Virus record (IMG/VR): IMGVR_UViG_3300043786_000977
Span: 1-64,000 of that record
Reading direction: 5' to 3' (one strand)
Length of the DNA stretch: 64,000 nt
The notes under the pieces were generated by a model. It saw only the letters and a list, made by a program, of their open reading frames with translations. It did not search any database and was not told the origin of the DNA. Position numbers and translations under genes: made by a program. Positions 45,626 through 62,895 of this stretch are shown piece by piece. Numbering within the stretch: position 1 is the first letter of the stretch; each line of letters opens with the position of its first letter.

Positions 45626-46618
45626 ATGAATACAAGTGATCGCATACCACTGATCCCGCCCACGCGGGTTAAGATTGCCGTCTCGATTCTGTCCGAGACA
45701 CAAGACTATAATCACCGTCTAATGAACATTCCGGCGATGTGGCGTAGTACACGCGGCGCTGGCGTCAAGGTCGCTATTCTGGATACAGGTCTGCCTAAGC
45801 ATGTCGATCTGTTACCCTCCGGTGGTAAGAGTTTTATTGAAGGGTATCTGCTCGATACAAACGGGCATAGTACACACTGCGGTGGTATTATCGCAGCAAC
45901 CGCCAATAACAATATGGGTGTGATGGGCATTGCACCGGACGTTGAAGACTGGTACGGGGCAGTCCTGGATGGTGATGGTCAAGGTAGTATTGATTCCATT
46001 ATCAACGGCATTCGGTGGGCTGTAGACGTTGTTGGCGCCGACATCATCAGTATGAGTCTAGGTATACCGGCCAATGCACGCTACGAACGAGCACTGGAAG
46101 CAGTGTGCCAGTATGCTGTGAACCAGGGCGTCGCAATATTTGCCGCGGCTGGCAACGAGTACGGTGCTGTGGGTCAGCCCGCGCAATACGATTGCGTATA
46201 CGCGGTTGCCGCAATCGATAAGAACTTCACACCAGCAGATTTCTCGAATCGGGGACAGTCAGTCGACTTTGCGGCCGGCGGTGTAGACGTCTTTTCGACC
46301 TACCTTAACGATACGTACGCCAAGTTGAGTGGTACGTCTATGGCTACTCCTGCACTCGTGGGTGTCGCAGCACTCATTCTCAGCGACGCCAGGCAGGGCG
46401 CACAGCCCCGTAAACTGACACCGGCTGAGTTGGGCGCCAAACTACGGAAGATAGCATTTGACGTCGGGCCTGCTGGCGTAGACGATGCGACAGGTATCGG
46501 AATTCCTGTCTTCCAGTCGTCAGGTACCGAACCCGTCGTACCACCTGTGGTAGTCCCGGGCTATCCGACTCACCGGCCCTGGTGGCAATACCTGTGGCCT
46601 GGTTATTGGTGTCTCTGA
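45626..46618 (+). CDS. Subtilisin-family (S8) serine protease
   Basis: Catalytic motifs VAILDTG, NGHSTHCGG and SGTSMATP; oxyanion AAAGN; AGGAGG RBS. Confidence 0.92.
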   Translation: MNTSDRIPLIPPTRVKIAVSILSETQDYNHRLMNIPAMWRSTRGAGVKVAILDTGLPKHVDLLPSGGKSFIEGYLLDTNGHSTHCGGIIAATANNNMGVMGIAPDVEDWYGAVLDGDGQGSIDSIINGIRWAVDVVGADIISMSLGIPANARYERALEAVCQYAVNQGVAIFAAAGNEYGAVGQPAQYDCVYAVAAIDKNFTPADFSNRGQSVDFAAGGVDVFSTYLNDTYAKLSGTSMATPALVGVAALILSDARQGAQPRKLTPAELGAKLRKIAFDVGPAGVDDATGIGIPVFQSSGTEPVVPPVVVPGYPTHRPWWQYLWPGYWCL

Positions 46619-47447: not shown

Positions 47448-47888
47448 ATGTTTTTACCCATAAGACCGATAGGCGTGAACACGCCGAATCCGGAGGATCG
47501 CATGCCGATATGGCAGGTGATCAATGGTGATGATTGGTCGCTTAACACACGGGTCTATATTCCACCTGCACTAACCACACCCGCAACGCCAGACAACAGT
47601 CGTGTGATCTTTGTCTTGGCCCAGGATCGTTTTAGCAAGACACCTATCTGGACCGCCCGTTGGTTGGACGGTATTCTTGAAGCAGACAAAATCAATCATC
47701 CCGGTTTGATCAGCGTACGTATCCCAGATGATATTACGAGTACACTGCGGCGTGGTGCGTACGCCTTTTCGCTGACTGTGGCAGACAGTTTCGGACGGCA
47801 CACGGTGACAGTGTTGACTGGCGCCATTCAAGTGGAATACGAGCCCACGTCACCTTTGCATAACATCCCGTATAGGAGAGATTCATGA
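47448..47888 (+). CDS. Hypothetical beta-rich (Ig-like?) protein
   Basis: GGAGG RBS; GDDW...GLISVRIP..T..L..GAY.F pattern. Confidence 0.6.
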   Translation: MFLPIRPIGVNTPNPEDRMPIWQVINGDDWSLNTRVYIPPALTTPATPDNSRVIFVLAQDRFSKTPIWTARWLDGILEADKINHPGLISVRIPDDITSTLRRGAYAFSLTVADSFGRHTVTVLTGAIQVEYEPTSPLHNIPYRRDS

Positions 47889-48883
47889 GTGATAAGGTAG
47901 CCCAGGAAATTGAACAAAAAAGGAAGGCGCCACCACGCCATAAACCGCGGGATGTAGCCTATCCTGATTATAACAAGTCACTCGTCACTCAACGGCATCG
48001 ATCACCGTTACGCGCTGGTGGGGAGCGTGCTGCTCAGACCGGTTTAACAGGGGCGGTACTCGGTGCACTCATCGCTCGCATTATGAGCAACAAGCCTCAG
48101 AATGTGGTTGGCGGTGCATTGGCTGGTGGTGCGTTGGGTGCAGTCCCGGGATTCGTTTCAGGTGCACGGGAAGCGAACAGTGAGAACAGTCGACTCCTCT
48201 TCCTACGTCGGCGCATGGGGATCAACGAACCAGGTGAACTGGATGCCCTGTTACAACATCCCGAGCTCATGCCATCGTTGAGTCAGAAGAAGGCCGCTGC
48301 ACCCAGCGCTATTTTGCAGGCTTTACAGAAGTTGCATCCGGTCAATAAAGGGTTGTTAACAGCAGGTGCTGCTGGTTTAGGCTGGGTCGGCGGTACGGAG
48401 GGTACATCGCGACTGGTGGGTTATCACGATGACCCGAGTGCACGGCATGTAGGCGGTTATGTCAATGCCGCGCAGGCGGCAGGGATCGTCGCGGCTATCT
48501 TGAGTAAGAAACCGCAGGCCCTTCATTTTCTAAAGAAACCAGGAACCTTAGCAGGTATGGCAAGTATGGAAGTAATTCCTGCAGGACTACGTTCCATGAA
48601 CCGTATGTCAGATGCTTCAGCAGCACAAGCAACGGGTCAGGTTTCACCGTCGATCTCTCGTGTCTTGAATACGTCTACTGCCCGGGGCGCAGGAATCGGC
48701 GCCGGTGCTGCAGGGTTGGCTGCCATTGTCTCTGGACTCTCAAGGTCCAAGCGTGACAAAGAGATCCAAGAGGGCCACGGCCGCGCTGGAATGGTCACCA
48801 GTGACTTCCTTAAATACTTGTTGCCTGCCATGATCGGTGGCGGTGTCGTCGGTTCTTTAACTGGGAAAAAGCCTTCTGCATAA
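47885..48883 (+). CDS. Glycine-zipper membrane-type protein with K-x-A motifs
   Basis: MSDKVAQ start, internal QKKAAA, about six GxxxG hydrophobic segments. Confidence 0.65.
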   Translation: MSDKVAQEIEQKRKAPPRHKPRDVAYPDYNKSLVTQRHRSPLRAGGERAAQTGLTGAVLGALIARIMSNKPQNVVGGALAGGALGAVPGFVSGAREANSENSRLLFLRRRMGINEPGELDALLQHPELMPSLSQKKAAAPSAILQALQKLHPVNKGLLTAGAAGLGWVGGTEGTSRLVGYHDDPSARHVGGYVNAAQAAGIVAAILSKKPQALHFLKKPGTLAGMASMEVIPAGLRSMNRMSDASAAQATGQVSPSISRVLNTSTARGAGIGAGAAGLAAIVSGLSRSKRDKEIQEGHGRAGMVTSDFLKYLLPAMIGGGVVGSLTGKKPSA

Positions 48884-49419
48884 TGAAAGAACTCATCATA
48901 CCGCAGCCAGCAAACGGTCGTTTCGGGTTTCCTGAATGGGGTTCACACATCCCCGTTATCACGAAAGTCCTGGACCGTCTCCAACCCAAGACCATTCTGG
49001 AATTGGGTAGTGGTGATCATTCTACAATCGTGTTTCATAGTTACGTGACCGGTGTCCCCGGCCGTTCATTGGTGACTCTGGATAATGATCTGACGTGGAT
49101 TGAGGGATTAGCGTGGCAACGGAACGCACAGCATGAAATACGTTATGTACCTGACTGGGATCCAAAGCATCACGATGGTTACTATGATCTGATCTTCATT
49201 GACCAGGCCCCCGAAGAAACACGTTGGCAGATATCGTTAGAGTGGGCGGCAACGCACTGTACCGTGGCAATGGTACATGACGAAAACTACGTAGATCGTT
49301 ACGGTCACCTTTATCCACTTTTCGCTTCCCGTGTCAACTATGGTGCCTACAAGTTCCATACCGGTGTCTTTGGGCGCGAAATCGATGTGACCGAATGGTG
49401 GCCTGACGGGGGCATCTGA
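48883..49419 (+). CDS. Class I SAM-dependent methyltransferase-like protein
   Basis: ILELGSG motif I, YDLIFID and VHD motifs. Confidence 0.7.
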   Translation: MKELIIPQPANGRFGFPEWGSHIPVITKVLDRLQPKTILELGSGDHSTIVFHSYVTGVPGRSLVTLDNDLTWIEGLAWQRNAQHEIRYVPDWDPKHHDGYYDLIFIDQAPEETRWQISLEWAATHCTVAMVHDENYVDRYGHLYPLFASRVNYGAYKFHTGVFGREIDVTEWWPDGGI

Positions 49420-50522
49420 TGAATCCGACACCGGATTATCTTGTCGTCGGCGCCGGTCCCTCCGGTTGTGTTATTGCGGAACGGCTGGCCGGCCGCGGCT
49501 GTTCTGTATGTCTGGTTGATAAACGAGACCATATCGGGGGTAACTGTCACGATGCGTATGACGATGCAGGCATCTTGGTGCACAGGTACGGGCCACACTA
49601 CTTCCGTACAAACGATGATGCGTTGCTGCAGTACCTATCTCAATTCACCGGTTGGTTACCTGCACAGTATATCGTGCAGAGCAAAGTAGGTGAGATATAC
49701 TATCCGCTGCCGATCAACCTGACGACATTGGAGATGTTCTTCAACCGAACGTTTGACGAGACGTCTGCCCGTGAATTCATTAAGTCCCGTTGTGAACCCA
49801 TAGCACAACCGACGAATGCGGAAGAGTACGTGCTGGCCAACATGGGCCGGGAACTCTATGAGACATTCTACCGGCCGTACACATTGAAACAATGGGGTTG
49901 TTCACCGCGGGAAATTGATGTCGCCGTATGTGGGCGGGTACCTATACGGTTCAACCGTGATTGCCGTTACGTGACACACAGGCATCAGTGTATGCCGGCC
50001 GACGGATACACGGCTCTGTTTACCCGTATGGTGACAGCGCGTGGTATCGTGGTACATTTGAACACGGATTACACGGCCATCAAAGAGTACTGCAAACCGA
50101 AGATTGCAACCGTGTATACCGGGCCTGTAGACACATATTTCGGTCACTGTTACGGTGCGTTACCGTGGCGTTCATTACGTTTCGAACCGCGGTATTATGC
50201 CACGGTTTTTAAGCAACCCTGTGTCCAGGTCAACTATCCGGATGAACAACCCTTTACACGTTCCGTCGAGATCAAACATGTCACGGGACAGGTACATCCC
50301 GCGACGACTGTGATATACGAGTACCCGGTAGCGACGGGTGAGCCTTACTATCCGGTACCCTCACAGGCATCGCGTGAACAGTATGCCCGGTATCAGGAAC
50401 TAGCAGAGCGTGAGACTGCACTACACCGTGTTCATTTTATCGGTCGCCTGGCCCAGTATACCTATATTGACATGGACCAGGCGATACTGGCTGCACTTAA
50501 AGCAGCGGACACGCTCATTTAA
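49419..50522 (+). CDS. glf: UDP-galactopyranose mutase
   Basis: VVGAGPSG FAD motif, RDHIGGNCHD, HRYGPHYFRT, YTLKQWG, LPWRSLRF, EPYYPV and GRLAQYTYIDMDQ. Confidence 0.93.
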   Translation: MNPTPDYLVVGAGPSGCVIAERLAGRGCSVCLVDKRDHIGGNCHDAYDDAGILVHRYGPHYFRTNDDALLQYLSQFTGWLPAQYIVQSKVGEIYYPLPINLTTLEMFFNRTFDETSAREFIKSRCEPIAQPTNAEEYVLANMGRELYETFYRPYTLKQWGCSPREIDVAVCGRVPIRFNRDCRYVTHRHQCMPADGYTALFTRMVTARGIVVHLNTDYTAIKEYCKPKIATVYTGPVDTYFGHCYGALPWRSLRFEPRYYATVFKQPCVQVNYPDEQPFTRSVEIKHVTGQVHPATTVIYEYPVATGEPYYPVPSQASREQYARYQELAERETALHRVHFIGRLAQYTYIDMDQAILAALKAADTLI

Positions 50523-52029
50523 GCCAGCTGTTCGCCAGCGAGTTACCGAGGTCCAGTACCACTTTGCCTGTGGCCTGGGCCAGCCGCACAGCAAGGCCTT
50601 TACCTGGCGCCCCTCCACTGAGAAGCACAAGGCCCGCGTGGTGCTGCTCTACGACGTCTGTGATGCGCTTGTGATCACGCCAGCCAGTCATTACCACGCC
50701 TGTAATGTCAGGGTGCTTATAACGCTTTTGCAGACTCGTGGCTAACCGTTCAGCGTCACCGTGTAGAATGAGCACACCACCCTGGTTGAGCACAGGACCC
50801 ACACGTCCTGTCGCCTGCCACAGTTCAGGGTAAAACTGATCAATGAAACGATCACGTTCAGGGAAGTACGGGTGTACCAGGAAATCGGCCCAGAAGATAC
50901 CCGAGATTGTGCAGGCCAGGAAGTCCGCATGGTTGCCGGCCCAGAGCAGATCACTACCCAACGCCTTCAAATCACAATCAACCAATCCGATACGTTTCAA
51001 GTAGGCCGGGTCTTTAAGGAAATGCTTAGGTGCTTCCTCACCGCGACTGTAGGCAATAATCGCCCGTTCACCGTCCGACATACGTACCACCGATGTCGGT
51101 ACTTTGTGTTTAAGGCGGTGTACGATCATGGCGGCTAATGCGTCGGATGAAAGTATCTTGTTGCAGAAGGCTTCGGTTTCGGCTGACAAGACGATTTTAC
51201 TGAAGTCCGGTCCTTGAACCTGTGGTATTTGTGCCCGTGGTTTTTGTACCTGCTGCTTTATTACGGTTGCTTTTGCCACAACGGGTACTGCGGGTAGACT
51301 CGGGATCGTCCACTTAGGCCACGCCTTCAACTTCTTATCTGACTCTCTGATATAATTCGCACGTCGGTGTAACGGATCCTTTATCCATTCTTTGGGATTT
51401 GGCAGTATCCATTTGTTAGCGCCACGCAAACGGATTAACGGGGTATGTGTGCGTTGCGCCCATACCGCGATATCTTCGTCGTCGCCTGAATGGATTGGCC
51501 CAGTACAAACGTCACGGGTTAAACCGAGCGCCTGTGGGTACGAGGCCATTACACCCGCACCGAGAATGTGTACACCGATATCGCGACTGATAGCATGATC
51601 GTAACCGTACAGGACGCGATTATCTTTCGCCAAGTTACGTGCGGGCATCGGTGCACCATTGCGTATACGATAAACACCACCATGTAGACCTACGATCGCT
51701 TTACGCTGGTAACGGTCAACGGCCTCGACAAGGTATTTAGCGTAGTCTGGTGGGTAGAGTATATCATCATCAACGGATAGATAATAACCGGCTTCGGCGC
51801 CTAACCAATGGAACTTACCGTGACTACCGACATCGGGCGCCGTGCACTCGGGGCCGGCCAGGATCACATCAAGTTTGGCGTCGTTTGGTAGCTCAGGCGG
51901 TCGTTCCGAATACCCGTTCAGATATAAACGCAGTACGTCGCATTGGGGTAGTAGGTCAGCAACTGCACGCAACATACCTGCTTTACGAGGCGGAAACGAC
52001 GCCATGGCAACAATGATTGGATCACTCAT
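50515..52029 (-). CDS. Two-domain glycosyltransferase: GT-A (GT2-like) plus GT-D-fold-like domain
   Basis: ASFPPR...YLSVDDDILYPPDY (DxD) in the N-half; SVVRMSDGE and GKVVLDLG in the C-half. Confidence 0.75.
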   Translation of the reverse strand: MSDPIIVAMASFPPRKAGMLRAVADLLPQCDVLRLYLNGYSERPPELPNDAKLDVILAGPECTAPDVGSHGKFHWLGAEAGYYLSVDDDILYPPDYAKYLVEAVDRYQRKAIVGLHGGVYRIRNGAPMPARNLAKDNRVLYGYDHAISRDIGVHILGAGVMASYPQALGLTRDVCTGPIHSGDDEDIAVWAQRTHTPLIRLRGANKWILPNPKEWIKDPLHRRANYIRESDKKLKAWPKWTIPSLPAVPVVAKATVIKQQVQKPRAQIPQVQGPDFSKIVLSAETEAFCNKILSSDALAAMIVHRLKHKVPTSVVRMSDGERAIIAYSRGEEAPKHFLKDPAYLKRIGLVDCDLKALGSDLLWAGNHADFLACTISGIFWADFLVHPYFPERDRFIDQFYPELWQATGRVGPVLNQGGVLILHGDAERLATSLQKRYKHPDITGVVMTGWRDHKRITDVVEQHHAGLVLLSGGAPGKGLAVRLAQATGKVVLDLGNSLANSWLK

Positions 52030-52059
52030 TCACTCACTCCATTCGTAGTATAAAGATTT

Positions 52060-54846
52060 CTACGCTATATTGCGTAACGGTATTATCCTGTCAGCTGCCA
52101 CAACCCGCGGAAGCCAGAGCAGTTTCCGTTCGATCTGTGTATTCCATGTTTCCTTACGGATGATCCAGCAACGGTTCTTATCGACTTCGAGTTCTTCAGG
52201 ACCGTCAACGAGCAAGTTACGCTCCTTCAGTTCCTGCGTCAAGCCTTTGACGTCAAATGATAACTGCGCCGTCAGTTCCTTGTTCATACGATTTACGACT
52301 GCATGACTGATGATGACGTAATCATCCAATACGAAGATGTGTTGGTTACGAGCCGTGAAGCTGGTGGCAGTCGGCATCGCATTGTAGACGGTACAGATGA
52401 TAGGTGACTTGAATGACGCAAAGATGATTCGGTGCAGACTATCGAAGAACGAGTTAACGCCTGCGCCCATGTTATAGTAACTGTGTTTCATGATCTGCTG
52501 CATCATAGGCTGTGTGTCTAGTCCGAGCATAGTACAGATTGCACTGTAGGTACTCCAGGCCGGGTGCTGGCCGGTAGCATATACGTCAGTCGTTTTTGCG
52601 TGCACGATATACTCAAGTACGAAGGACGCAAACGACTCACGCAACTCAGCCAACGCTGCGGGATCGATGACACTCGTGGGTTCTGGTTTATCCGACACTG
52701 GTAATATGTAGGTCGTCCTCAGATCGCCGCCGTACATACCCGCCGTACTGCCGTCGGTTAGGGCGACCAGACTTATGGGACTGTTGAGGATCACTTGTTG
52801 CATACGGTCGCCACGCAGCGGAGGCAGGCAACCAATGAGGGGTAACGTACCTAGTTGTTCGTAAGCCTCAAGACTCTTGATTGGATTGGCAGGATCGATA
52901 ACGGGGATGAAATCATTGTCCGAGAAGAAGGCGCTGAGTTGACGGAATAACGGTTGCCATATACCAGCTTCCGACTCTACATAGAAAAGGTGACGTGGGC
53001 GTTGGTTATGTCCATGCTTCGCGTGGTGTAGTTCCTGTGTCATTTGGTGTACGACGTGCAGCAAACCACTGGTGAATGCTGCCACGTACATATTGTCACA
53101 ACTCTGCAACAGGTAGCGGTAGGGCTCCACCGCGCTTATTACGCTTTGCCCGGGGATTCCAGAGTATACTTGTGTTGCTGCAGCCGGCAACGTATGGATC
53201 TGTTTTTGTGGTGCAATGACAAGTTGATCCGTTCTGATGACAAAATTCGGTAAGTGTAGATCGTGGGCCTGGTCACAGCCCAGTCGTTGAACCTCACGAT
53301 GGAGTTCGCACTTTTCACCCAATTTACATAGGATGTCACGCCAGTCGTAACCCGGGTGCTCGTAGAACGCAATATACGGGGCTTGATTGCGTTCGCCGAA
53401 TGCACGGATGACGTGACGTTGTAATTCCTTTGCCTTGCCCCATATCGGTTCTGGTATACGTACGACTAACGGTAATGTGGCAGTATCTGTAGGTGTCACC
53501 GTGACGATGAGTTCTTCCTCACCTGTGTATGTACGGATTTTATGGTTAACAGTGATGCCGACGTTGCACAAGACTGATTCGTTACCTCGACGATCGAGTG
53601 CTTTGAGTGCCGTAGTCGTGCGATAGAGTCCGCATCCGTTTCCGAGGATCAGGCGATTTGTGGATTCGGCAACAGCTGTTTGTAGAATCTCTAGCCCTTC
53701 TTTCGAGATCTTCAGACGTTGTGCTGCGCTTATTAGTTCTAGACGTACATTGTCAGGTAACGTAACGGAGTAGAATGCCTTGTATACCTCTTCGGTACCG
53801 TTATGACTTAAAAGGCGATCCATTGTTCGGAGTGTCCACGTGTCTAATGCGAGTGTGCCATCCGCACTACTCAGACGATGCCTAAGCTGTTCCGCTGTAA
53901 TCTGTGTAGCGTCGTGGGCCTCCCACACCTTGATCCGTGGTTGTAGGGCGGCGCCACTTACGTAATGCTGGACGGCTAGTGTTTGCAGTGCGTTGAACAG
54001 CGTGAGAGGCTGTGCCTGCGTAGCTAGTAGAAAAAGAATGTCCAATGAGGCGAAACGTTCAGGCAGCGGGAACCCGGCTAGCGCGATGATGGGTGGTCGC
54101 TTACTGGATTCGGCCGTGTAGGTCCCATATAGTAAACTGGCTGCATGTGGATCGAATGTCGCGATCACGGAACGTGGCATATCATCGAACCGCTCCATGT
54201 AGACACCGATATCGTCCCGCGTAATCGTTATCGTTGTAGTCGTCAGTGGTGATGCTGCATCTTCCACGCGAATATGGGTGACCTCGCCGTTGTACGTGAA
54301 TGGGTAGATGATATGATTCGTGCGTTGGTACTTGGTCTTGTTAAATTCCTGGAACGGTCGTGGAATCTCGTCACCCCGAACGAGCAAGCCGATCTCGGGC
54401 GGTAGGACTCGTAGGTTATTCTGCGACAGGCCGGCACGCAGTTGTAACTTATTGGGTGTTTGGCGACAGGCTTGTTGGCATTGGCTTACGTACGCCTGGA
54501 TACGACTTTGTGTGGTGCGCCCTTCCGTATAGGCGGCAGCCTCGCTATCCAATAAGGGTTCTGTCAACAGGTGAGCGTAGGTGCCGCCTGGACGGAATTG
54601 GGCTACGGCTTCTGTAATCGTGAGGCGTTTTACCGCACTGAGTAGACTGACTGCGTCACCATAGAAGCGACAGGCAGGGTCCGCACACTCGAAGAACGTA
54701 TTACCCGTATACGGATTGGCATGAACACGCAAGGTGTCGGCCGCACTAGCGTGCAGGGGACAGCTATACTTGGCGTTGACATTATCCCCCGGATGGGGTA
54801 ATGTACATCCTAAAGCAGATAAGAAGTTGTGGTTATGCAGTTGCAT
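52060..54846 (-). CDS. Primase-like protein with N-terminal CHC2-type zinc finger, apparently degenerate
   Basis: CPLH...FECADPACRFYGDAVSLL...LTITEAV zinc-binding domain; no clear TOPRIM acidic motifs or Walker A. Confidence 0.5.
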   Translation of the reverse strand: MQLHNHNFLSALGCTLPHPGDNVNAKYSCPLHASAADTLRVHANPYTGNTFFECADPACRFYGDAVSLLSAVKRLTITEAVAQFRPGGTYAHLLTEPLLDSEAAAYTEGRTTQSRIQAYVSQCQQACRQTPNKLQLRAGLSQNNLRVLPPEIGLLVRGDEIPRPFQEFNKTKYQRTNHIIYPFTYNGEVTHIRVEDAASPLTTTTITITRDDIGVYMERFDDMPRSVIATFDPHAASLLYGTYTAESSKRPPIIALAGFPLPERFASLDILFLLATQAQPLTLFNALQTLAVQHYVSGAALQPRIKVWEAHDATQITAEQLRHRLSSADGTLALDTWTLRTMDRLLSHNGTEEVYKAFYSVTLPDNVRLELISAAQRLKISKEGLEILQTAVAESTNRLILGNGCGLYRTTTALKALDRRGNESVLCNVGITVNHKIRTYTGEEELIVTVTPTDTATLPLVVRIPEPIWGKAKELQRHVIRAFGERNQAPYIAFYEHPGYDWRDILCKLGEKCELHREVQRLGCDQAHDLHLPNFVIRTDQLVIAPQKQIHTLPAAATQVYSGIPGQSVISAVEPYRYLLQSCDNMYVAAFTSGLLHVVHQMTQELHHAKHGHNQRPRHLFYVESEAGIWQPLFRQLSAFFSDNDFIPVIDPANPIKSLEAYEQLGTLPLIGCLPPLRGDRMQQVILNSPISLVALTDGSTAGMYGGDLRTTYILPVSDKPEPTSVIDPAALAELRESFASFVLEYIVHAKTTDVYATGQHPAWSTYSAICTMLGLDTQPMMQQIMKHSYYNMGAGVNSFFDSLHRIIFASFKSPIICTVYNAMPTATSFTARNQHIFVLDDYVIISHAVVNRMNKELTAQLSFDVKGLTQELKERNLLVDGPEELEVDKNRCWIIRKETWNTQIERKLLWLPRVVAADRIIPLRNIA

Positions 54847-54869
54847 TTCAGTTCGATATGCTCCATACT
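54841..54869 (+). promoter_or_regulatory. Candidate sigma-70-type promoter in the divergent gap
   Basis: TTGCAT-N17-CATACT. Confidence 0.45.
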
Positions 54870-54904
54870 ACACATGTTGGAGTCTGAAAGTAAAGGAGAT
54901 TTCT

Positions 54905-55957
54905 ATGGATATAATTCATGACCTTAGTCACCGCACCTGGTACCACATCGGCACGCAGCACGCGGCGTTGATTCCGTCCTATGTCTTGGATGCCACACTG
55001 CCTGAGAAAACGGCGGCAGACGCGCTTCCAGACCGAGCGTACGCTGACGATGTCAGACGCTTGTTCCCGATCGTAACACCGGTTGATACTTGGTTGTCTG
55101 CAGCTTATTTTGCTAAACATGCTGAAGAAGTATACACATCTGCGCTGCGAAGTCACGTAGAATCGCGTATCAAGGAAGCTGCGGCTGTTTTCGGTATTGC
55201 TGATGATGTGGCAACAATCATGACCGCTATACGGCAAGTACCCGAGGTGAAACAGGCTTCGGATAGTGGCTACGGTTGGGTGAATGGTACAGAGCGTAAG
55301 TACCCCATGTTCGACGCCAAGGGGGTCCATAAGGCTGCTGAGTACTTCATGGAGAATCGGTATCAATACCCGCCGGCGATGCGTAAGACAATTGCAGCAG
55401 CCATCATGCGTAAGGCCGGTGAATACAAGGTCGATGTACCCACGTCTATTCGTAAGGAAGCAGGACACGGGATGCCGCGGCGTGACACGTTGATGGCGGA
55501 ACTGCTGGCTCGTGCCCAGATGACTAAGGACGCCGAGATCAGCGCGGCCATTGCCAATCTCAATGAAATAATCCCCAACGTGGACATGGCTGAATTGGGT
55601 GGGGTGCTGGATAAGTTCGCGGAAATCGTCGATGCTTTAGATAACGCAGAGAACCTGCGTTGCGGTTACGGTAAACGACTCCTGGCACCGGCCGAATTCA
55701 TTTATGACCTAGATCCCAAGGAGGCTCAAGCCCTAGCTGAAGATTCTGTGGAATTGAATCATTGGGTCTTTAGCATCACCAAGCTTGCAGCACTATCCCC
55801 GGACATATACAGTGGTGTACTCGGGGACGATTTTGCAATACGGATTAAAGCCGCGGACGGCAAGATCGATAAGACAAAACTGGCCGACGAGCTATTTTCT
55901 CTGCCGCGTCCGGATCGTGCAGCGTTGGAATCGCATTTAAAAACCGTGTTTTCGTGA
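54905..55957 (+). CDS. K-x-A-rich helical protein, putative head core protein
   Basis: ATG 54905 after AAGGAG; 12 of 21 lysines are in K-x-A. Confidence 0.7.
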   Translation: MDIIHDLSHRTWYHIGTQHAALIPSYVLDATLPEKTAADALPDRAYADDVRRLFPIVTPVDTWLSAAYFAKHAEEVYTSALRSHVESRIKEAAAVFGIADDVATIMTAIRQVPEVKQASDSGYGWVNGTERKYPMFDAKGVHKAAEYFMENRYQYPPAMRKTIAAAIMRKAGEYKVDVPTSIRKEAGHGMPRRDTLMAELLARAQMTKDAEISAAIANLNEIIPNVDMAELGGVLDKFAEIVDALDNAENLRCGYGKRLLAPAEFIYDLDPKEAQALAEDSVELNHWVFSITKLAALSPDIYSGVLGDDFAIRIKAADGKIDKTKLADELFSLPRPDRAALESHLKTVFS

Positions 55958-56670: not shown

Positions 56671-56972
56671 GATCAGCATTACTAACAGTGGAGTTCTGGG
56701 TGACGATGGTAACGAACGTCGTCGGTTTAGTTGTCCTGTTCGGTGGACTATCCGCGGATAAAGCAGATTCGCTGAAGTCGACCCTGACAGTGATCATAGG
56801 TGCCGTACTACCGCTGGTCGCGTCGACAGTATACGCCAAGTCGCGTAGTGATCTGAAACGCACAATTGCAGATGCAACACTTTATCGTCTAACGCCTACG
56901 GATGCAGACGGTAAGGTACGCACTGCTTCAGTGGACGACGCGACAGCTGTTTTAAAACGTCTGGGCATCTAA
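56667..56972 (+). CDS. Holin-like small membrane protein
   Basis: 101 aa, two hydrophobic helices, TVEFW N-terminal motif, charged C-terminal tail. Confidence 0.45.
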   Translation: MRSALLTVEFWVTMVTNVVGLVVLFGGLSADKADSLKSTLTVIIGAVLPLVASTVYAKSRSDLKRTIADATLYRLTPTDADGKVRTASVDDATAVLKRLGI

Positions 56973-58708
56973 TGACCAACGTACGTCCAGAAAAACCGAC
57001 AGGCCCCGGTAATCGGGGTCTGTCGACTACCGTTACCCGTGAGCTCGGAACCAAGACCGGTGCTTATGCAGGGCTTGTCAAGATCGCACAAGGAGTGTTA
57101 GGCGCTGTCCGAAGCGGGGTGCTTTCGCCTTTGTCTAAAGCCAGAAGTATTACGAGTGTAGGTAACGCGGTCACCCAAGGTCTGCCCAGTTCTACTTCAA
57201 ATAGTCTGCCAGGACGCGCCATCGAGACTGCGGATACGGTACTAGGCACTACTGCAAGTGGTGTCGGTTTGACCGGTTACGGTGCTGAGTTGACGGGTGC
57301 TGCACTTCGGGGAATACCTCTTGCCGCTAACACGGTGGCGACTACAAAAGGCATAGCGGGAGCCGCGGGTCGTGTTGCCGTACCCTTGGCGCTCGCAGGG
57401 CATGCGATTGATACAGCCCGCTTAATTAACGATCCACGGGGAGTGACTGATGCGGCTGCCGCCAATATTCAGGATTACGGTGACAGCTTCGGCAGTGCGA
57501 TGAAAGCAGTTGGGCATAATACGCTGCAAGCAGTAGGCTCATCTATTCCAACAATCGCAGCTACAGTTCGTGGTGTAGGCGAATTAGGTTCACAACTCGT
57601 GGAAAACAGACGCCTCGCTGCTCGAGATCGACAGCTTGCACCGCGGTATCGTATACTTCAATTACAACAACAGCAACGGCAACGGTTAAAACAACTGCAG
57701 CCACCACAACAGGCCGGGACGTTCGTACAGAAGACTAGTATGTTCTCAGGCCTCGTCAAGATCGCCCAGCAGAACTTTGCTCCAGGTATCGTCGACAAGG
57801 CAGTCTACGGCGATGTGTTGGGTACCCTGAAACCCGGCGACATCACTGACTTCGTATTGCAACACCACAGTACAGTACGTAACCCCAAGTATCCACATTA
57901 CGACATGCGTCTAGGTACCAAGGATACGAATCTTTTCAGTTGGGCCATACCCAAGGCAGAATTGCCGCGTCCAGGCACATCCAAGATGCCGATCCCGCAG
58001 ACTCAATTGCATACGTACCAGTACGGTAGCTTCGAAGGTAAGATCCCACACGGATATGGCGCCGGCGTAGTAAGAATGGCCGACAAGGGTAAGGCAGTCA
58101 TCACCCGTGTCACGCCAAACACGCTCCATTTTACCCTGGGGCATACCAAGGTACCTACACGTTACGTGCTTGTCCATATCGGTGGACGGGACGGTAAGAT
58201 GTGGCAGTTAATCGCGAAACCCGAACCAGGTAAGGTACCGGGCGCGGACGAGGAACCCATCTACGCACGGATAAACGCCGTCGACCAGGACGATGCGATC
58301 CAACAGGCAACCCAGGTCCAGGCGAAAATTGACAAGGCTGCGTCGCTTATTCCGTTGCGCTTCATCAACAAGAAGGGCGGGGTGAAAGCATCAGCGGCTG
58401 TTGAGATTGCAGATACCGCTGAACTGCGTCGCATTGGTTTATCCAAACGTGCATCGCTACCTGCCAATCACGGTATGTTCTTCGATAAGGTCGGTGCCTT
58501 CTGGATGAAGGATGTTCACTTTCCTTTAGACTTGGTATTTGTCGATCGACATGGTACGGTACTCGAGAAGCACGCGATGCCAGTAGACAAGGGCGGACGT
58601 AAGTTATATAGACCATCTAGCGCTGACGTTGCGCATGCGATTGAACTCCCGCACGGTTGGTGTGACCGTTATGGGATAACGACGGGTGACATTGTAAAGG
58701 CGGGTTAA
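56972..58708 (+). CDS. Multidomain protein: Gly/Ala hydrophobic domain, LigD-type DNA 3'-phosphoesterase domain and DUF192 domain
   Basis: FVLQHH..HYDMRL..LFSWAIPK..H...Y..FEG.IP.GYGAGVV...DKG (LigD PE); VEIADT...GL..R..LP...GMFF...FWMKDVHFPLDLVF...IELP.G (DUF192). Confidence 0.85.
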   Translation: MTNVRPEKPTGPGNRGLSTTVTRELGTKTGAYAGLVKIAQGVLGAVRSGVLSPLSKARSITSVGNAVTQGLPSSTSNSLPGRAIETADTVLGTTASGVGLTGYGAELTGAALRGIPLAANTVATTKGIAGAAGRVAVPLALAGHAIDTARLINDPRGVTDAAAANIQDYGDSFGSAMKAVGHNTLQAVGSSIPTIAATVRGVGELGSQLVENRRLAARDRQLAPRYRILQLQQQQRQRLKQLQPPQQAGTFVQKTSMFSGLVKIAQQNFAPGIVDKAVYGDVLGTLKPGDITDFVLQHHSTVRNPKYPHYDMRLGTKDTNLFSWAIPKAELPRPGTSKMPIPQTQLHTYQYGSFEGKIPHGYGAGVVRMADKGKAVITRVTPNTLHFTLGHTKVPTRYVLVHIGGRDGKMWQLIAKPEPGKVPGADEEPIYARINAVDQDDAIQQATQVQAKIDKAASLIPLRFINKKGGVKASAAVEIADTAELRRIGLSKRASLPANHGMFFDKVGAFWMKDVHFPLDLVFVDRHGTVLEKHAMPVDKGGRKLYRPSSADVAHAIELPHGWCDRYGITTGDIVKAG

Positions 58709-61700: not shown

Positions 61701-62895
61701 TAAGGTCATATTTGAAGCGGCTTCGTCGAGTCTTGGAATGTCTCCTTTCCACGAACTACATGTAATTGATGCCGGTATATCGGGAGGAGTTGAGTACAAG
61801 GGAACCAGCAATACAAACTCTGGTCAATCTGGACACATCTTCTTGCGTGATTCACAAGTGGGTACGATCCAATCCATAGAAGGTTGGGCTGGCGTTACTC
61901 TGTTCTCATACGGCTGGGGTGGTGGTCATACAGGCGGTGGATACGCAGGTAGTGGCATAGGTTCACTGATCGGTAGCGTTCTGCCTTATAATCTTCAATC
62001 GACGATGATCAGCGGCGGCATGAACCTCACAGACGCTTATCCCGGAACCAGTCCAGAGATGTTGTGGCACAACGTCAGATTTGAAACTAATTTCATATAT
62101 GTCGTTACCAATGTTACTTATGGAGTTAAACTCGATACAGCCTCTTACAATTCTTGGCTAGAAGCATCGTTGCCGTCTGAGCGTGGAGTTTGGACCACCG
62201 ACGGTAAGATGGTGCTGACTGATTACGGTTCAGGGTCGTTTGGTAATGCCACGAATATGTTCCGTGGTGTCGGCACAACGGGAGCAGTGACCAGCGTATC
62301 TGCGGACACCAACAAGTACCTGAGGGGTGATGGTAACTGGATAGCAGTTCCGATGGGTCCTGCTGGAACTAACGGAGTTAATGGAACTAACGGCTCTAAC
62401 GGTGTGGCCTTCGTGACTATTTCCAATGTGGTAACACTCGCCTCCGGCTCTTCTGCTTATGTGAGCAACGTGGTGGTCGGAACCACGAACCGCCTGACGT
62501 TCGGCATCCCTGCCGGTAGGGATGGTGTAATTACTAACAGCGGGTACATGGCCATCACCAACTGGCCGACCGCTGCTGGCATCACCAACATCATCACCTT
62601 GGTTCCCGGGTACACCATCTATAACTTAACCGTTACAAATCAACCAACGGTGATTAATTTTGCTTTTTCTAATTCACCAATAGCGAGTCAGGCAGTCAAC
62701 TTCGAGTTGGTCTTGAAGCAGACAACCACCAACACGTATATCTATTTACCAGGAACGAATCGGGTGTATTACTTCTCGACCCCCACCACCAACGCAACGG
62801 TAGCAAACCAAAGGCATTACTCAAGCTGGCGTGTGTGGATGGAAGGCTCAACCACAAATATCTTCTGCAACCAATGGCTGACGAGGAACCCATGA
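58774..62895 (+). CDS. Large T-N-rich fibre/adhesin-like protein with Sec-type signal peptide
   Basis: ATG 58774 after GGAGG; MRFLGIVLVALLGLIPVSHG|Q; GDMLTWDGSNW and KYLRGDGNW fibre motifs; two GxxxxPYxT beta-helix-entry motifs; short collagen-like GxN run. Confidence 0.75.
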   Translation: MRFLGIVLVALLGLIPVSHGQNATLAQLGARGVTEVGGSSIYAHYMLRLGPDGRITMAVLPAGLGVPVPGSQIAYLDPVTGVDDPLRVGGPTTPYKTLNYATTTYPSNAVSGVIYVLAPGTYASTLIDTTTTTGRRTLTLLGYETRRTYIPEVKYYGSSGGDVTVTLHGVHVGKLWQANNKAMTVYLTGNARIDSLEMNGAKPCTVYRESGTVIGSFTGSLMYTNQWLDTATQMGYTPTNTAHWYGSEPLTIADALHALAGRCPVPYGTVPGDMLTWDGSNWVRVANGTTNDFLIGGTMPSFQPRYIWPGTSAGAVPYWDIGTTNWLSVTGTTNSQHVLFGGVTPAFGRLQATHMDYINGTTTTVHAVLGDYAVRLNNLELVSNLVVWAANSWSNSAARGITNNQVALWDWAANSWSNSPAFGITSNNITLWTTAATNWVGSAAFGITLEDTGRWNTYMTNSIPIRYLRREGALLGQTIVFDGTNWVSAVADWWITNGPERMVTVEGYTNTVDKAFLTDGTRPMTARIPIFVDDGVAAISIGAWQGTSYVYNVFGELYLRDNTRPGYRITTAKELDDYARTNYVTDIVVASTNPIPNWIISSTNPIPNWIISSTNPIPSWIMSATNPIPSWIASATSPIPSWITASTSGLVRATITNGLASTNYVIASTNPIPLWITSATNPIPSWITSATNPIPSWIISATNPIPSWITASTSGLVRATITNGLASTNYVIAATNPIPGWITSATNPIPGWITSATNPIPSWITSATSGLVRATITNGLASTNYVIAATNGLVTKTITNGLASISYVNGVTSGIPAMITAATNSLVTKAITNGLASIDYVTGAISGIPIYATGNNIYVDNQRTDPFTPDGTIMRPYATVSAAMAVIGSSQPADWENVTLRFYAVKVMPGTYVEDVTVPWKPFVSIDLSSAVIVGNITRSIPDGDFSTRVSTLVIKGDSLRPAYLDGQHTVIGIAGKVIFEAASSSLGMSPFHELHVIDAGISGGVEYKGTSNTNSGQSGHIFLRDSQVGTIQSIEGWAGVTLFSYGWGGGHTGGGYAGSGIGSLIGSVLPYNLQSTMISGGMNLTDAYPGTSPEMLWHNVRFETNFIYVVTNVTYGVKLDTASYNSWLEASLPSERGVWTTDGKMVLTDYGSGSFGNATNMFRGVGTTGAVTSVSADTNKYLRGDGNWIAVPMGPAGTNGVNGTNGSNGVAFVTISNVVTLASGSSAYVSNVVVGTTNRLTFGIPAGRDGVITNSGYMAITNWPTAAGITNIITLVPGYTIYNLTVTNQPTVINFAFSNSPIASQAVNFELVLKQTTTNTYIYLPGTNRVYYFSTPTTNATVANQRHYSSWRVWMEGSTTNIFCNQWLTRNP
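60541..61143 (+). repeat. 33-bp coding repeats (S/A-TNPIPSWITS) punctuated by three GLVRATITNGLASTNYV units
   Basis: About 12 copies of the 11-aa unit in three blocks. Confidence 0.9.

What the first reader, a model, noticed from the sequence alone, without database searches (positions are those of the whole stretch)
48883..52029. Galactofuranose glycosylation cassette: methyltransferase, UDP-galactopyranose mutase and GT-A/GT-D fusion
Seen: MTase and glf are coupled to a K-x-A membrane-type gene and converge, with an 8-bp overlap, on a two-domain glycosyltransferase. Known: Glf makes UDP-Galf for surface glycans, and the GT-D fold was defined in enzymes that glycosylate serine-rich adhesins. 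Inference: the phage builds a methylated Galf-containing glycan on virion proteins or remodels host surface glycans. DNA modification is possible but less supported.
Basis: partly seen in the sequence, partly recalled or inferred. Interest (0 to 1): 0.6.

Follow-up and report, generated by a model that had tools for sequence, protein, structure and literature searches.

The report
Swappable sugar-coating gene island in phage
A 209-kb freshwater jumbo phage carries a conserved two-domain glycosyltransferase next to a swappable set of sugar-tailoring genes (here a galactofuranose-forming mutase and an O-methyltransferase). It most likely decorates the phage's own particle proteins with a strain-specific glycan, something so far shown for only a few phages.

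Summary
Window 48883-52029 encodes a 178-aa SAM-methyltransferase-fold protein, a bona fide UDP-galactopyranose mutase (Glf), and a convergent 504-aa glycosyltransferase that overlaps glf by 8 bp. The transferase has an N-terminal KfiA/PmHS2-like (GT45-type) GT-A domain and a C-terminal GT-D (DUF1792-like) domain.

- **Island structure.** In related jumbo phages the fusion and its flanks are conserved. The genes between them are swapped for pyruvyl-, acetyl- and methyl-transferases and extra GTs. Glf plus the methyltransferase is one allele of a variable glycan-tailoring slot, shared with one sister phage and under purifying selection.
- **Sugar supply.** The genome also encodes GalE, completing UDP-Glc to UDP-Galf.
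- **Target.** In small phages the same fusion, followed by the same methyltransferase family, sits directly after the portal gene and the presumed capsid gene. Wider GT45-like relatives also cluster with capsid and prohead-protease genes. No ThyA homologue or TET enzyme exists to create a DNA hydroxyl handle. No GtrB-type GT2 and no serine-rich acceptor was found.

Best reading (about 0.45): virion-protein glycosylation with a methylated, Galf-containing glycan. DNA and host-envelope targets remain possible. Which enzyme uses UDP-Galf is unresolved.

The parts
48883..49419 (+). 178-aa class I SAM-dependent methyltransferase-fold protein. It resembles cation-dependent (COMT/TrmR-type) O-methyltransferases and is the putative sugar O-methyltransferase. 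It occupies the variable slot.
   Evidence: There is no Pfam or PDB sequence hit and no word-search relative. The exhaustive search found 524 relatives. The family profile weakly hits family-3 OMTs (8k1f, E 0.005). AF2 gives pLDDT 93.8, and Foldseek gives E 1e-6 to putative and catechol O-MTs and TrmR. Invariant residues are E40, G42, G44, S47, D107, R114, H132 and D133. dN/dS is 0.10 against the sister phage. Its closest relatives lie directly downstream of GT-D-like fusions in small phages.
49419..50522 (+). UDP-galactopyranose mutase (Glf), which converts UDP-Galp to UDP-Galf. It occupies the variable slot.
   Evidence: PF03275 scores E 1e-63 with an N-terminal FAD/NAD Rossmann domain. The TIGR00031 equivalog scores 309.1 bits against a 303.75 cut-off. 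It aligns to 3hdq at E 3.6e-106 over residues 6-361. It is 85% identical to the sister phage, at most 59% to bacterial Glf and at most 40% to other phage Glf. dN/dS is 0.17. It is absent from relatives L003 and L004.
50515..52029 (-). 504-aa bifunctional glycosyltransferase, the conserved core of the island. It is convergent with glf and overlaps it by 8 bp.
   Evidence: There are 23 full-length orthologues at 37-59% identity. dN/dS is 0.076.
51277..52029 (-). GT-A domain (residues 1-251) of KfiA / PmHS2 GlcNAc-transferase type (GT45-like). It carries DDD 87-89 and GDDED 182-186.
   Evidence: phmmer gives E 5e-17 to PmHS2 residues 300-456 and 3e-13 to KfiA, with the DDD motif aligned. VIA gives Z 28.8 (rmsd 2.6 A, 238 aligned) and 24.2. 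The motifs are invariant in 24 sequences. The domain also occurs duplicated or fused to other modules.
50518..51201 (-). GT-D (DUF1792-like) domain (residues 277-504). S318-D-G-E-R322, SGG 471-473 and K477 are invariant or nearly so. It follows a Pro-rich linker of variable length.
   Evidence: PF22882 GT-D-like scores 55.3 bits against a 27 cut-off. NF040628 scores 45.2 bits, below its 75 cut-off. VIA gives Z 14.9 to 4phr, 14.7 to 4pfx and 14.2 to 5v4a over 277-504. A sequence profile alone does not reach DUF1792 in the PDB.
47885..48883 (+). 332-aa Gly/Ala-rich glycine-zipper protein. It is the conserved left flank of the island and is translationally coupled to the MTase. Function is unknown.
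   Evidence: Gly-zipper Pfam hits are weak and below cut-off. It has five moderately hydrophobic segments. It is about 52% identical in L003 and L004, always at the island border. The Atlas search adds nothing.
47448..47888 (+). 146-aa conserved protein upstream of the Gly-zipper gene, part of the flank. Function is unknown.
   Evidence: It is 49-55% identical in L003 and L004 and 96% identical in the sister phage. No family hit was found.
52060..54846 (-). 928-aa DnaG-type primase (Zn-ribbon/Toprim, DUF927-like C-terminal part). It lies immediately upstream of the GT fusion, on the same strand, in all jumbo relatives.
   Evidence: A CHC2 zinc-finger pattern is visible in the translation. Atlas feature score is 0.96 to Zn_ribbon_DnaG/Toprim_2/DUF927 clusters. 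Synteny holds in L003, L004, L005, L019 and L020.

Best explanation
This is a phage-encoded glycan-building island whose likeliest target is the phage's own structural (capsid or other virion) proteins.

**Shown.** The island has a conserved core, a cytoplasmic two-domain glycosyltransferase made of a GT45-like GT-A domain plus a GT-D domain. Beside it lies a slot in which related phages carry different sugar-tailoring genes.

**Inferred pathway in this phage.**
1. The phage GalE (genome 129341-130324) makes UDP-Galp from host UDP-Glc.
2. Glf contracts it to UDP-Galf.
3. The two GT domains add two successive sugars to an acceptor. One domain may use UDP-Galf, or a further GT-B-like enzyme at genome 113231-114256 may do so.
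4. The COMT-like methyltransferase O-methylates a sugar hydroxyl and so caps the glycan.

**Inferred consequence.** The result would be a lineage-specific, methylated, Galf-containing glycan on virions. Relatives would instead make pyruvylated, acetylated or differently methylated glycans.
For: **Enzyme identities.**

**Sugar supply.** GalE passes its equivalog model at 397.5 bits against a 262.3 cut-off, which completes the UDP-Galf route.

**Island structure.** The order LigD-like ... primase -> (optional stand-alone GT45-like) -> GT fusion -> variable genes <- Gly-zipper <- 146 aa is conserved in five or more jumbo-phage contigs. The slot holds:
- PS_pyruv_trans, three Methyltransf_24-like genes and an RXYLT1-like GT in L004;
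- a methyltransferase-like and a hexapeptide acetyltransferase-like gene in L003 (by eye only; Pfam found nothing in either);
- a pyruvyl-transferase-like gene, Glyco_transf_15 and Methyltransf_21 in L005;
- only one gene in the P0016 contig.

Pyruvyl ketals, O-acetyl and O-methyl groups and Galf are typical decorations of protein- or lipid-linked glycans.

**The fusion and the methyltransferase travel together.** The closest MTase relatives (44% identity) lie directly after a fusion of about 500 aa.

**Head-module context.**
- In three small-phage contigs the order is terminase - portal - a 476-530 aa gene (weak Peptidase_S78 hit, read as a protease/capsid gene) - GT fusion (- MTase) - small head/tail genes.
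- In L024, a split GT45 gene and GT-D gene follow two PF05065 capsid genes.
- Among 25 non-redundant IMG/VR loci with GT45-like relatives, the commonest neighbours after GT2 (7) are Phage_capsid (6) and Peptidase_S78 (5).
- In all 5 records where a PF05065 capsid is recognisable, it lies 2-3 genes from the GT.

**Precedent and negatives.**
- Mycobacteriophage Che8-type capsid glycosylation by phage GTs is a precedent (PMC11256854, citing Freeman 2023).
- The genome has no ThyA homologue and no TET/JBP enzyme.
- No strongly hydrophobic (membrane-type) segment was found in the GT, MTase or Glf; the GT's best window (residues 367-389) scores only 1.27.
- All three genes are under purifying selection.
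Against: - No acceptor is identified.
- The jumbo phage's capsid gene is not recognised, and here the island is not next to head genes. It sits at the border between the tail-side structural genes and the replication genes. The GT is co-oriented with a primase, which fits an early or middle, DNA-related role equally well.
- The small-phage contigs with the full fusion come from closely numbered assemblies and may be one lineage. The '476-530 aa capsid' call rests on gene order and one weak S78 hit, and no DNA was available for these contigs.
- The neighbour tally for the wider GT45-like family is only a modest enrichment (about 7 of 25 loci).
- The same fusion exists in relatives without glf, so its use of UDP-Galf is unproven.
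- The only published functional link for a phage Glf is to DNA glycosylation (PMC13326640).
- The methyl acceptor of the MTase is inferred from fold and context only.
Confidence: 0.45

Rival explanations
1. DNA sugar hypermodification. The GT fusion would glycosylate a modified base in phage DNA, using UDP-Galf made by GalE and Glf, and the methyltransferase would tailor the DNA-linked sugar. The varied cassettes would then diversify DNA glycans to evade restriction and CRISPR.
For: - The GT fusion is always co-oriented with, and immediately downstream of, the primase. It adjoins LigD-like and other replication or repair genes.
- In Rhizobium phage RL38J1 a phage Glf is proposed to feed galactosylation of 5-hydroxycytosine in DNA (PMC13326640).
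- GT-A-fold DNA glycosyltransferases exist in phages (bioRxiv 10.1101/2023.12.21.572611).
- One fusion homologue (P0035) lies near a faint dNMP-kinase-like gene.
- The GT is mildly basic, with pI 9.0.
Against: - The complete 209-kb genome has no ThyA-family hydroxymethylase or hydroxylase and no TET/JBP dioxygenase. Its only thymidylate synthase is ThyX. All known sugar hypermodifications start from one of those two routes.
- The fusion and MTase sit in head modules of small phages.
- Pyruvyl, acetyl and multiple methyl tailoring enzymes are not known for DNA glycans.
- The phage may already use another DNA chemistry, since it has PurA-like and MazZ-like genes.
- This Glf is only about 36% identical to RL38J1's and is closer to bacterial Glf.
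Confidence: 0.15
2. Host-envelope or sugar-pool manipulation. During infection the enzymes would alter host surface polysaccharide (LPS, EPS, capsule), or divert UDP-Gal, for example to mask receptors against superinfection or to stop progeny from being trapped on debris.
For: - Glf, GalE, KfiA-like GTs and pyruvyl, acetyl and methyl transferases are all classic cell-surface polysaccharide enzymes.
- KfiA and PmHS2 build capsular heparosan.
- The Glf is most similar to bacterial Glfs at 55-59% identity, which suggests capture from a host-like genome.
- Earlier phage papers read glf as a host-benefit gene (PMC6630229).
- A conserved glycine-zipper, membrane-like protein abuts the island.
Against: - There is no GtrB-type GT2, and no strongly hydrophobic (membrane-type) segment in the GT, MTase or Glf. 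Flippases and polytopic GT-C enzymes were not searched for specifically.
- The phage looks lytic and jumbo-sized with its own RNAP genes, so lasting serotype conversion is unlikely.
- Placement of the fusion and MTase inside head modules of small phages is hard to explain on this view.
- The Gly-zipper gene is conserved whatever the cassette holds.
Confidence: 0.15
3. Another acceptor. The island would glycosylate a non-virion protein (a host defence or receptor protein, or a phage non-structural protein), or make a soluble methylated oligosaccharide or small-molecule glycoside.
For: - GT-A enzymes of this structural neighbourhood include protein O-glycosyltransferases such as ppGalNAc-Ts and collagen GTs.
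- The MTase's nearest folds are small-molecule and tRNA O-methyltransferases.
- No acceptor was found.
Against: No positive context evidence exists. The repeated association with capsid and prohead-protease genes and with several glycan-tailoring enzymes favours a polymeric glycan on a structural target.
Confidence: 0.1

Closest known systems
Mycobacteriophage virion glycosylation (Che8 and other cluster F1 phages; Freeman et al. 2023, as cited in PMC11256854)
   Same: Phage-encoded cytoplasmic glycosyltransferases that decorate the phage's own capsid proteins with glycans. In my recollection methyltransferases are also present. Gene content varies between related phages.
   Different: The hosts are actinobacteria and the GT families differ. 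The genes lie near the right genome end, not next to the capsid gene. No Glf, GT45-like or GT-D domain is reported there. Glycosylation was shown by experiment in those phages, whereas here it is inferred.
Streptococcus parasanguinis dGT1 (DUF1792 GT-D domain plus a GT-A domain) acting on the serine-rich adhesin Fap1 (PDB 4pfx/4phr; S. sanguinis 5v4a)
   Same: It is the only solved GT-D fold, matched at Z 14-15 over residues 277-504. It is also a bifunctional GT-D/GT-A protein that adds consecutive sugars to a protein-linked glycan (function from my knowledge of the 2014 and 2016 papers).
   Different: The domain order is reversed and the GT-A partner belongs to another family. Sequence similarity is too low for a profile hit. 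No serine-rich repeat acceptor exists in this phage.
KfiA (E. coli K5) and the GlcNAc-transferase domain of Pasteurella PmHS2, CAZy GT45 (PDB 5z8b, 8vh7, 8viw)
   Same: There is clear sequence and fold homology of residues 1-251 (E 5e-17, Z 28.8). The DxD (DDD) motif aligns. Both occur in two-domain transferases.
   Different: Those enzymes polymerise capsular heparosan together with a GT2 GlcA-transferase. Here the partner is a GT-D domain, identity is only about 23%, and donor and acceptor are unknown.
Rhizobium phage RL38J1 / Pootjesviridae DNA glycosylation cluster with Glf (PMC13326640)
   Same: A phage-encoded UDP-galactopyranose mutase is coupled to phage glycosyltransferases.
   Different: RL38J1 has a 5-hydroxy-dCMP-forming ThyA homologue and GT-B / other DNA GTs. 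This genome has no ThyA homologue. The two Glfs are about 36% identical. The GTs here belong to other families and associate with head genes elsewhere.
Giant-virus glycan machineries (chlorovirus A064R-type multidomain GT plus methyltransferase; mimivirus fibril glycan clusters with pyruvyl transferase). This comparison is from my own knowledge and was not tested.
   Same: The viruses encode multi-domain GTs, sugar methyltransferases and pyruvyl transferases, plus nucleotide-sugar enzymes, to build lineage-specific glycans on capsid proteins. The best BFVD structural matches of the fusion include multi-domain GTs of Homavirus, Pithovirus and megaviruses.
   Different: These are eukaryotic viruses. 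No specific homology beyond fold level was shown, and the architectures differ.

Membership tests
UDP-galactopyranose mutase (Glf, EC 5.4.99.9) | GLF domain plus an N-terminal FAD-binding Rossmann motif. Passes the curated equivalog model and aligns over full length to solved UGMs. | tested here: met
   PF03275 E 1e-63 and NAD_binding_8. TIGR00031 scores 309.1 against a 303.75 cut-off. 3hdq E 3.6e-106 over residues 6-361.
UDP-galactopyranose mutase (Glf, EC 5.4.99.9) | Catalytic interconversion of UDP-Galp and UDP-Galf. | not testable with these tools
   This needs an enzyme assay. Purifying selection (dN/dS 0.17) and a co-resident GalE are consistent with activity.
CAZy GT45-type GT-A (KfiA / PmHS2 GlcNAc-T) | Sequence homology to KfiA/PmHS2, a GT-A fold, and a DxD metal/nucleotide-sugar motif. 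| tested here: met
   phmmer E 5e-17 and 3e-13 with DDD aligned. Z 28.8 and 24.2. DDD 87-89 is invariant.
CAZy GT45-type GT-A (KfiA / PmHS2 GlcNAc-T) | Formal CAZy family assignment and retaining alpha-GlcNAc transfer from UDP-GlcNAc. | not testable with these tools
   No dbCAN/CAZy HMMs were on hand. Identity is about 23%, so donor and linkage cannot be inferred.
GT-D fold glycosyltransferases (DUF1792 / GT-D-like) | GT-D fold. | tested here: met
   PF22882 scores 55.3 bits against a 27 cut-off. Z 14.9, 14.7 and 14.2 to 4phr, 4pfx and 5v4a over residues 277-504.
GT-D fold glycosyltransferases (DUF1792 / GT-D-like) | The metal-binding DxE motif at the position seen in DUF1792. | tested here: inconclusive
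   D319-G320-E321 are invariant in 24 sequences. Residue-level equivalence to the Mn site of 4phr was not checked. NF040628 scored below its cut-off (45.2 against 75), and the sequence profile does not reach DUF1792.
Class I SAM-dependent, cation-dependent O-methyltransferases (COMT / family 3) | Rossmann-type MTase fold with the glycine-rich SAM motif I and an acidic residue after strand 2. | tested here: met
   AF2 pLDDT 93.8. Foldseek E 1e-6, TM about 0.6, to 3tfw, 7cvu and 5zw3. E40-x-G42-x-G44 is invariant. D67 aligns with the family's E in the SxEND consensus.
Class I SAM-dependent, cation-dependent O-methyltransferases (COMT / family 3) | Membership of a curated sequence family (Pfam Methyltransf_3/24) and a D...D-N type metal triad. 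| tested here: not met
   No Pfam family matches the protein itself even at E 10. Only 1 of 60 relatives touches Methyltransf_24, at E 0.006. Invariant D107 and H132-D133 may play the metal role, but that is inference.
Phage DNA sugar hypermodification systems | An enzyme that creates the hydroxyl handle: a ThyA-family dNMP hydroxymethylase/hydroxylase or a TET/JBP (5mYOX) dioxygenase. | tested here: not met
   PF00303 and PF12851 gave no match in the complete genome, while control genomes gave matches. Only ThyX is present.
Gtr-type serotype-converting phage systems | GtrB-type GT2 bactoprenol glucosyltransferase with membrane GtrA/GtrC. | tested here: not met
   No PF00535 match in the genome. 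No strongly hydrophobic segment in the island's enzymes; the GT's best window scores 1.27. GtrA and GtrC were not searched for specifically.
Serine-rich-repeat adhesin glycosylation (context in which GT-D was defined) | A Ser/Thr-rich repeat acceptor protein. | tested here: not met
   The highest Ser+Thr share in any 30-residue window of the 296 predicted proteins is 47%, and none is a repeat tract.
Phage virion glycosylation systems (Che8-type) | Glycans covalently attached to capsid or tail proteins by phage-encoded GTs. | not testable with these tools
   Only context evidence exists: head-module placement of the fusion and MTase and of GT45-like relatives.

The most novel reading that the evidence does not exclude
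Freshwater jumbo phages and unrelated small phages share a mobile 'virion serotype' system. It has a conserved GT45-like/GT-D bifunctional transferase plus a hypervariable slot of tailoring genes (Glf, O-methyl-, pyruvyl- and acetyl-transferases, extra GTs), exchanged much as O-antigen loci are. Each lineage would then coat its particles with a different glycan, here a methylated galactofuranose-containing one. If true, this would be the first Galf glycan on a virus particle. It would also show that virion glycan diversity is under diversifying selection in nature, for example against grazers, lectin-like traps, non-productive adsorption or host enzymes.
Probability: 0.3. Interest if true: 0.75.

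Novelty: new variant of a known kind. Interest (0 to 1): 0.6.

Why it matters
Virus-encoded glycosylation of virions is well established for giant viruses. Among phages it has been shown for only a few actinobacteriophages.

This locus suggests a widespread, modular version in environmental phages. One conserved two-domain transferase sits beside a slot where tailoring genes are swapped. The locus could be tested directly, because the enzymes are soluble and compact.

It also gives a context test for the many 'orphan' glycosyltransferases and glf genes in phage genomes, which are currently read either as host-benefit genes or as DNA-modification genes. In addition, it points to a previously unnamed methyltransferase family of more than 500 members that travels with the transferase. 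If Galf is on the particle, it would be a rare, non-mammalian sugar epitope on a virus.

Tried and rejected
- **Nucleotide search.** Megablast of the locus against deposited phages found no match.
- **PHROGs.** Only the protease, Glf (an unnamed family) and the tail sheath were recognised.
- **Related loci.** The search for related loci with the single protein found nothing. The alignment-based scan was needed.
- **Methyltransferase sequence searches.** Pfam, NCBIfam, PDB sequence search and the word search were all blank. That justified the one exhaustive search.
- **GT-D profile.** The GT-D domain profile against PDB sequences gave only chance-level hits, so the link to DUF1792 is by fold and Pfam only.
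- **Relatives' full records.** A search of these records for GalE and Glf could not be run because the records are not held. Whether GalE tracks Glf is therefore unknown.
- **Paralogues.** Local HMMs found no paralogue of either GT domain or of the MTase elsewhere in the genome.
- **Promoters and terminators.** The scan gave counts no higher than shuffled sequence, so transcription units were not defined.
- **Other unproductive look-ups.** The Gly-zipper protein has no informative relative. The L024 neighbours have no PDB relatives. The capsid gene of this phage was not recognised by PF05065.
- **Rejected readings.**
  - A SRRP-type acceptor.
  - A Gtr-type conversion system.
  - The minus-strand ORF 54848-55468, read as a likely shadow ORF of the plus-strand gene 54734-55957.
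- **Not used.** Complex prediction was not used because there is no candidate pair.

Full report
**Setting.** The window is the first 64 kb of a complete IMG/VR virus record of 208,908 bp with direct terminal repeats.
- Almost all of the roughly 296 predicted genes lie on the + strand.
- The upstream 47 kb holds structural genes, including a 1049-aa tail-sheath-like protein and a subtilase.
- From about 55 kb onward come replication and repair genes: a protein with a LigD 3'-phosphoesterase domain and, further on, DNA polymerase A, ligase, ThyX, dCMP deaminase and multisubunit RNA-polymerase genes.
- Near-identical sequence occurs in lake and freshwater metagenomes from many studies.
- No deposited phage is similar at the nucleotide level.

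**Observation.** The coordinates and junctions are exactly as reported.
- The 332-aa ORF and the 178-aa ORF share one base (TAATG).
- The 178-aa ORF and glf share one base (TGATG).
- glf and the minus-strand 504-aa ORF overlap tail to tail by 8 bp (50515-50522).

**Glf.** Glf is unambiguous.
- It has a GLF domain, an FAD Rossmann motif and a TIGR00031 score above the equivalog cut-off.
- It aligns collinearly with the D. radiodurans enzyme at E 3.6e-106.

**The 178-aa protein.** Pfam, NCBIfam, PDB sequence search and the word search left this protein open, so I spent the one exhaustive search on it.
- It belongs to an unnamed family with 524 detectable members.
- E-x-G-x-G, D107, R114 and H132-D133 are invariant in that family.
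- The family profile touches family-3 O-methyltransferases weakly.
- The AF2 model (pLDDT 93.8) matches cation-dependent O-methyltransferases (putative bacterial OMTs, catechol OMTs, TrmR) at E about 1e-6.
- 'Methyltransferase' is therefore supported at fold and motif level. 'O-methyltransferase acting on a sugar' is inference.

**The 504-aa transferase.** It has 23 full-length orthologues at 37-59% identity, and AF2 gives pLDDT 90.
- Residues 1-251 are homologous to the GlcNAc-transferase domain of PmHS2 and to KfiA. Sequence E is 5e-17 with the DDD motif aligned, and Z is 28.8 and 24.2.
- Residues 277-504 adopt the GT-D fold of DUF1792, with Z 14.9 over 201 aligned residues, and pass Pfam GT-D-like.
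- An invariant S-D-G-E-R stretch is the likely DxE metal site. Its positional equivalence was not verified.
- The two domains are joined by a Pro-rich linker of variable length.

**What the comparison adds.** Orthologues of the fusion lie in related jumbo phages with the same flanks. The order is LigD-like gene, a 218-aa gene and a 355-407-aa gene on one strand, then on the other strand the primase, sometimes a stand-alone GT45-like gene of about 230 aa, and the fusion. The Gly-zipper gene and the 146-aa gene converge on this block from the other side.

The genes between the fusion and the Gly-zipper gene differ in every lineage:
- L004 has a polysaccharide pyruvyl transferase, an RXYLT1-like GT and three Methyltransf_24-like genes.
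- L003 has a methyltransferase-like and a hexapeptide acetyltransferase-like gene, both judged by eye only, since Pfam found nothing in either.
- L005 and the P0009 contig have a pyruvyl-transferase-like gene, Glyco_transf_15, and Methyltransf_21 or Methyltransf_24.
- The P0016 contig has a single gene.

Glf and the 178-aa gene are absent from L003 and L004. They are present, in identical arrangement including the 8-bp overlap, in a sister phage (L019/L020). There dN/dS is 0.10 for the MTase, 0.17 for Glf and 0.08 for the GT.

The reported 'cassette' is therefore one allele of a variable tailoring slot attached to a conserved transferase. The Gly-zipper gene belongs to the conserved frame.

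The Glf is 55-59% identical to bacterial enzymes but at most 40% identical to other phage Glfs. This points to a separate capture from a bacterial genome.

**Supply and other enzymes.** Scanning the rest of the genome found the following.
- A GalE equivalog at 129341-130324, scoring 397.5 bits against a 262.3 cut-off. The phage can therefore make UDP-Galf from UDP-Glc by itself.
- A weak GT-B-type transferase at 113231-114256 (PF13524, 32 bits).
- No GT2.
- No paralogue of the island's domains.

**Target.** Three lines of evidence favour virion proteins.
1. The closest relatives of the methyltransferase (44% identity) lie directly downstream of a GT-D-like fusion of about 500 aa. The two genes therefore travel together across unrelated phage backbones.
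2. In small phages that pair, or the fusion alone, sits in the head module. The order is terminase, portal, a 476-530-aa gene with a weak prohead-protease signature (read as a protease/capsid gene), then the fusion, then small head-tail genes.
3. An alignment-driven scan of IMG/VR found 67 loci with GT45-like relatives.
   - One (L024) has separate GT45 and GT-D genes just after two capsid genes.
   - In 25 non-redundant loci the commonest neighbours within four genes were GT2 (7), Phage_capsid (6), prohead protease S78 (5) and hexapeptide acetyltransferases (3).
   - In all five records where a PF05065 capsid is recognisable, it lies two or three genes from the GT.

Capsid glycosylation by phage GTs is established in mycobacteriophages (PMC11256854, citing Freeman 2023).

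Caveats apply.
- The small-phage contigs may be one lineage and had no DNA available.
- The enrichment in the wider family is modest.
- In the jumbo phage itself the island is next to tail-side and replication genes, not head genes.
- This phage's capsid gene was not recognised.

**Rivals.**
- *DNA glycosylation.* This is the main rival because of the primase linkage and the RL38J1 precedent for Glf (PMC13326640). Against it, the genome lacks both known routes to a hydroxylated pyrimidine, ThyA homologues and TET/JBP (with positive controls). Published surveys tie DNA GTs to those enzymes. Pyruvyl and acetyl tailoring is unknown on DNA. The phage also carries a PurA-like and a MazZ-like gene, which hints at a different DNA chemistry.
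- *Host-envelope remodelling.* It fits the enzyme families but lacks a GtrB-type GT2 and strongly hydrophobic (membrane-type) segments in the enzymes. It also does not explain the head-module placement.
- *Serine-rich-repeat type acceptor.* This is excluded by the proteome.

**Unresolved.**
- Which enzyme uses UDP-Galf. The fusion also exists without glf, so either its donor preference shifted in this lineage, or the GT-B-like enzyme or a host enzyme is involved.
- The methyl acceptor.
- The timing of expression. The promoter and terminator scan was uninformative.

**Novelty.** No paper in the held library links DUF1792/GT-D domains to phages or Galf to virions.
- Structural relatives in the viral model library are unannotated GTs of uncultured phages and giant viruses.
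- I rate this a new variant of a known kind (virus-encoded virion glycosylation), with moderate confidence in the target and high confidence in the enzyme identities and the island structure.

Noticed in passing
outside the window: genome 126426-127691 (+) and 96422-96865 (+): A divergent adenylosuccinate-synthetase homologue scores far below the purA cut-off, and the PurZ model scores only 45.9 bits. A MazZ-type dATP/dGTP diphosphohydrolase domain (PF18909, 59.5 bits) is also present. Together they hint at a 2-aminoadenine (Z) genome, but this is not established.
   Followed up: partly
outside the window: genome 129341-130324 (+): A phage-encoded UDP-glucose 4-epimerase GalE (TIGR01179, 397.5 bits) lies 80 kb from glf. 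It completes the UDP-Galf route.
   Followed up: yes
outside the window: genome 113231-116408 (+): A weak GT-B-type glycosyltransferase (PF13524, 32 bits; best PDB hit Alr3699) lies next to a GP88-domain protein and a faint MptE/Maf-like protein. This may be a second glyco-related cluster.
   Followed up: partly
window 50515-54846 (-): The GT fusion and primase form one of very few long minus-strand units in an otherwise almost unidirectional 209-kb genome. The inversion is conserved in all jumbo relatives.
   Followed up: partly
window 54848-55468 (-) versus 54734-55957 (+): The 206-aa minus-strand ORF has an odd Cys-rich translation and overlaps a plus-strand gene that is conserved in L003 and L004. 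It is probably a shadow ORF.
   Followed up: partly
window 45626-46618 (+): A subtilisin-type S8 protease gene sits at the end of the structural block. It is conserved in the sister phage and matches a PHROG in which the domain lies inside an 1125-position profile.
   Followed up: no
window 56972-58708 (+): A 578-aa protein carries a LigD 3'-phosphoesterase domain. In relatives the orthologue is fused to DUF192, MazG, HD or ligase domains of varying make-up.
   Followed up: no
outside the window: genome 134985-136016 (+): An Anti-Pycsar Apyc1-like metallo-beta-lactamase-fold protein (PF23023, 71.9 bits) is a likely counter-defence nuclease for cyclic nucleotides.
   Followed up: no
outside the window: genome 134-209 kb: This region holds multisubunit RNA-polymerase domains (Rpb2_6, Rpb1_2/5), a caspase-like Peptidase_C14, a radical SAM protein, a class II RNR and RlaP, a gene set typical of jumbo phages.
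   Followed up: no
L024 10001-11817 (+): In this IMG/VR phage the GT45-like gene (243 aa) and the GT-D gene (374 aa) are separate ORFs overlapping by 40 nt, just after two capsid-family genes. This is either a split form of the fusion or a frameshift.
   Followed up: partly
proteins P0020, P0024, P0026, P0027, P0029, P0038-P0042, P0060, P0063: The GT45-like domain is a promiscuous module. It occurs duplicated in tandem, fused to GT2 or Methyltransf_21 domains, or placed behind an unknown N-terminal domain of about 180 aa.
   Followed up: partly
window 62835-64000 and beyond (genome 62835-64433, +): A 532-aa protein has a Gly_rich_2 domain (PF21722) and the most Ser/Thr-rich 30-residue window in the proteome (47%). 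It may be a fibre or surface protein.
   Followed up: no
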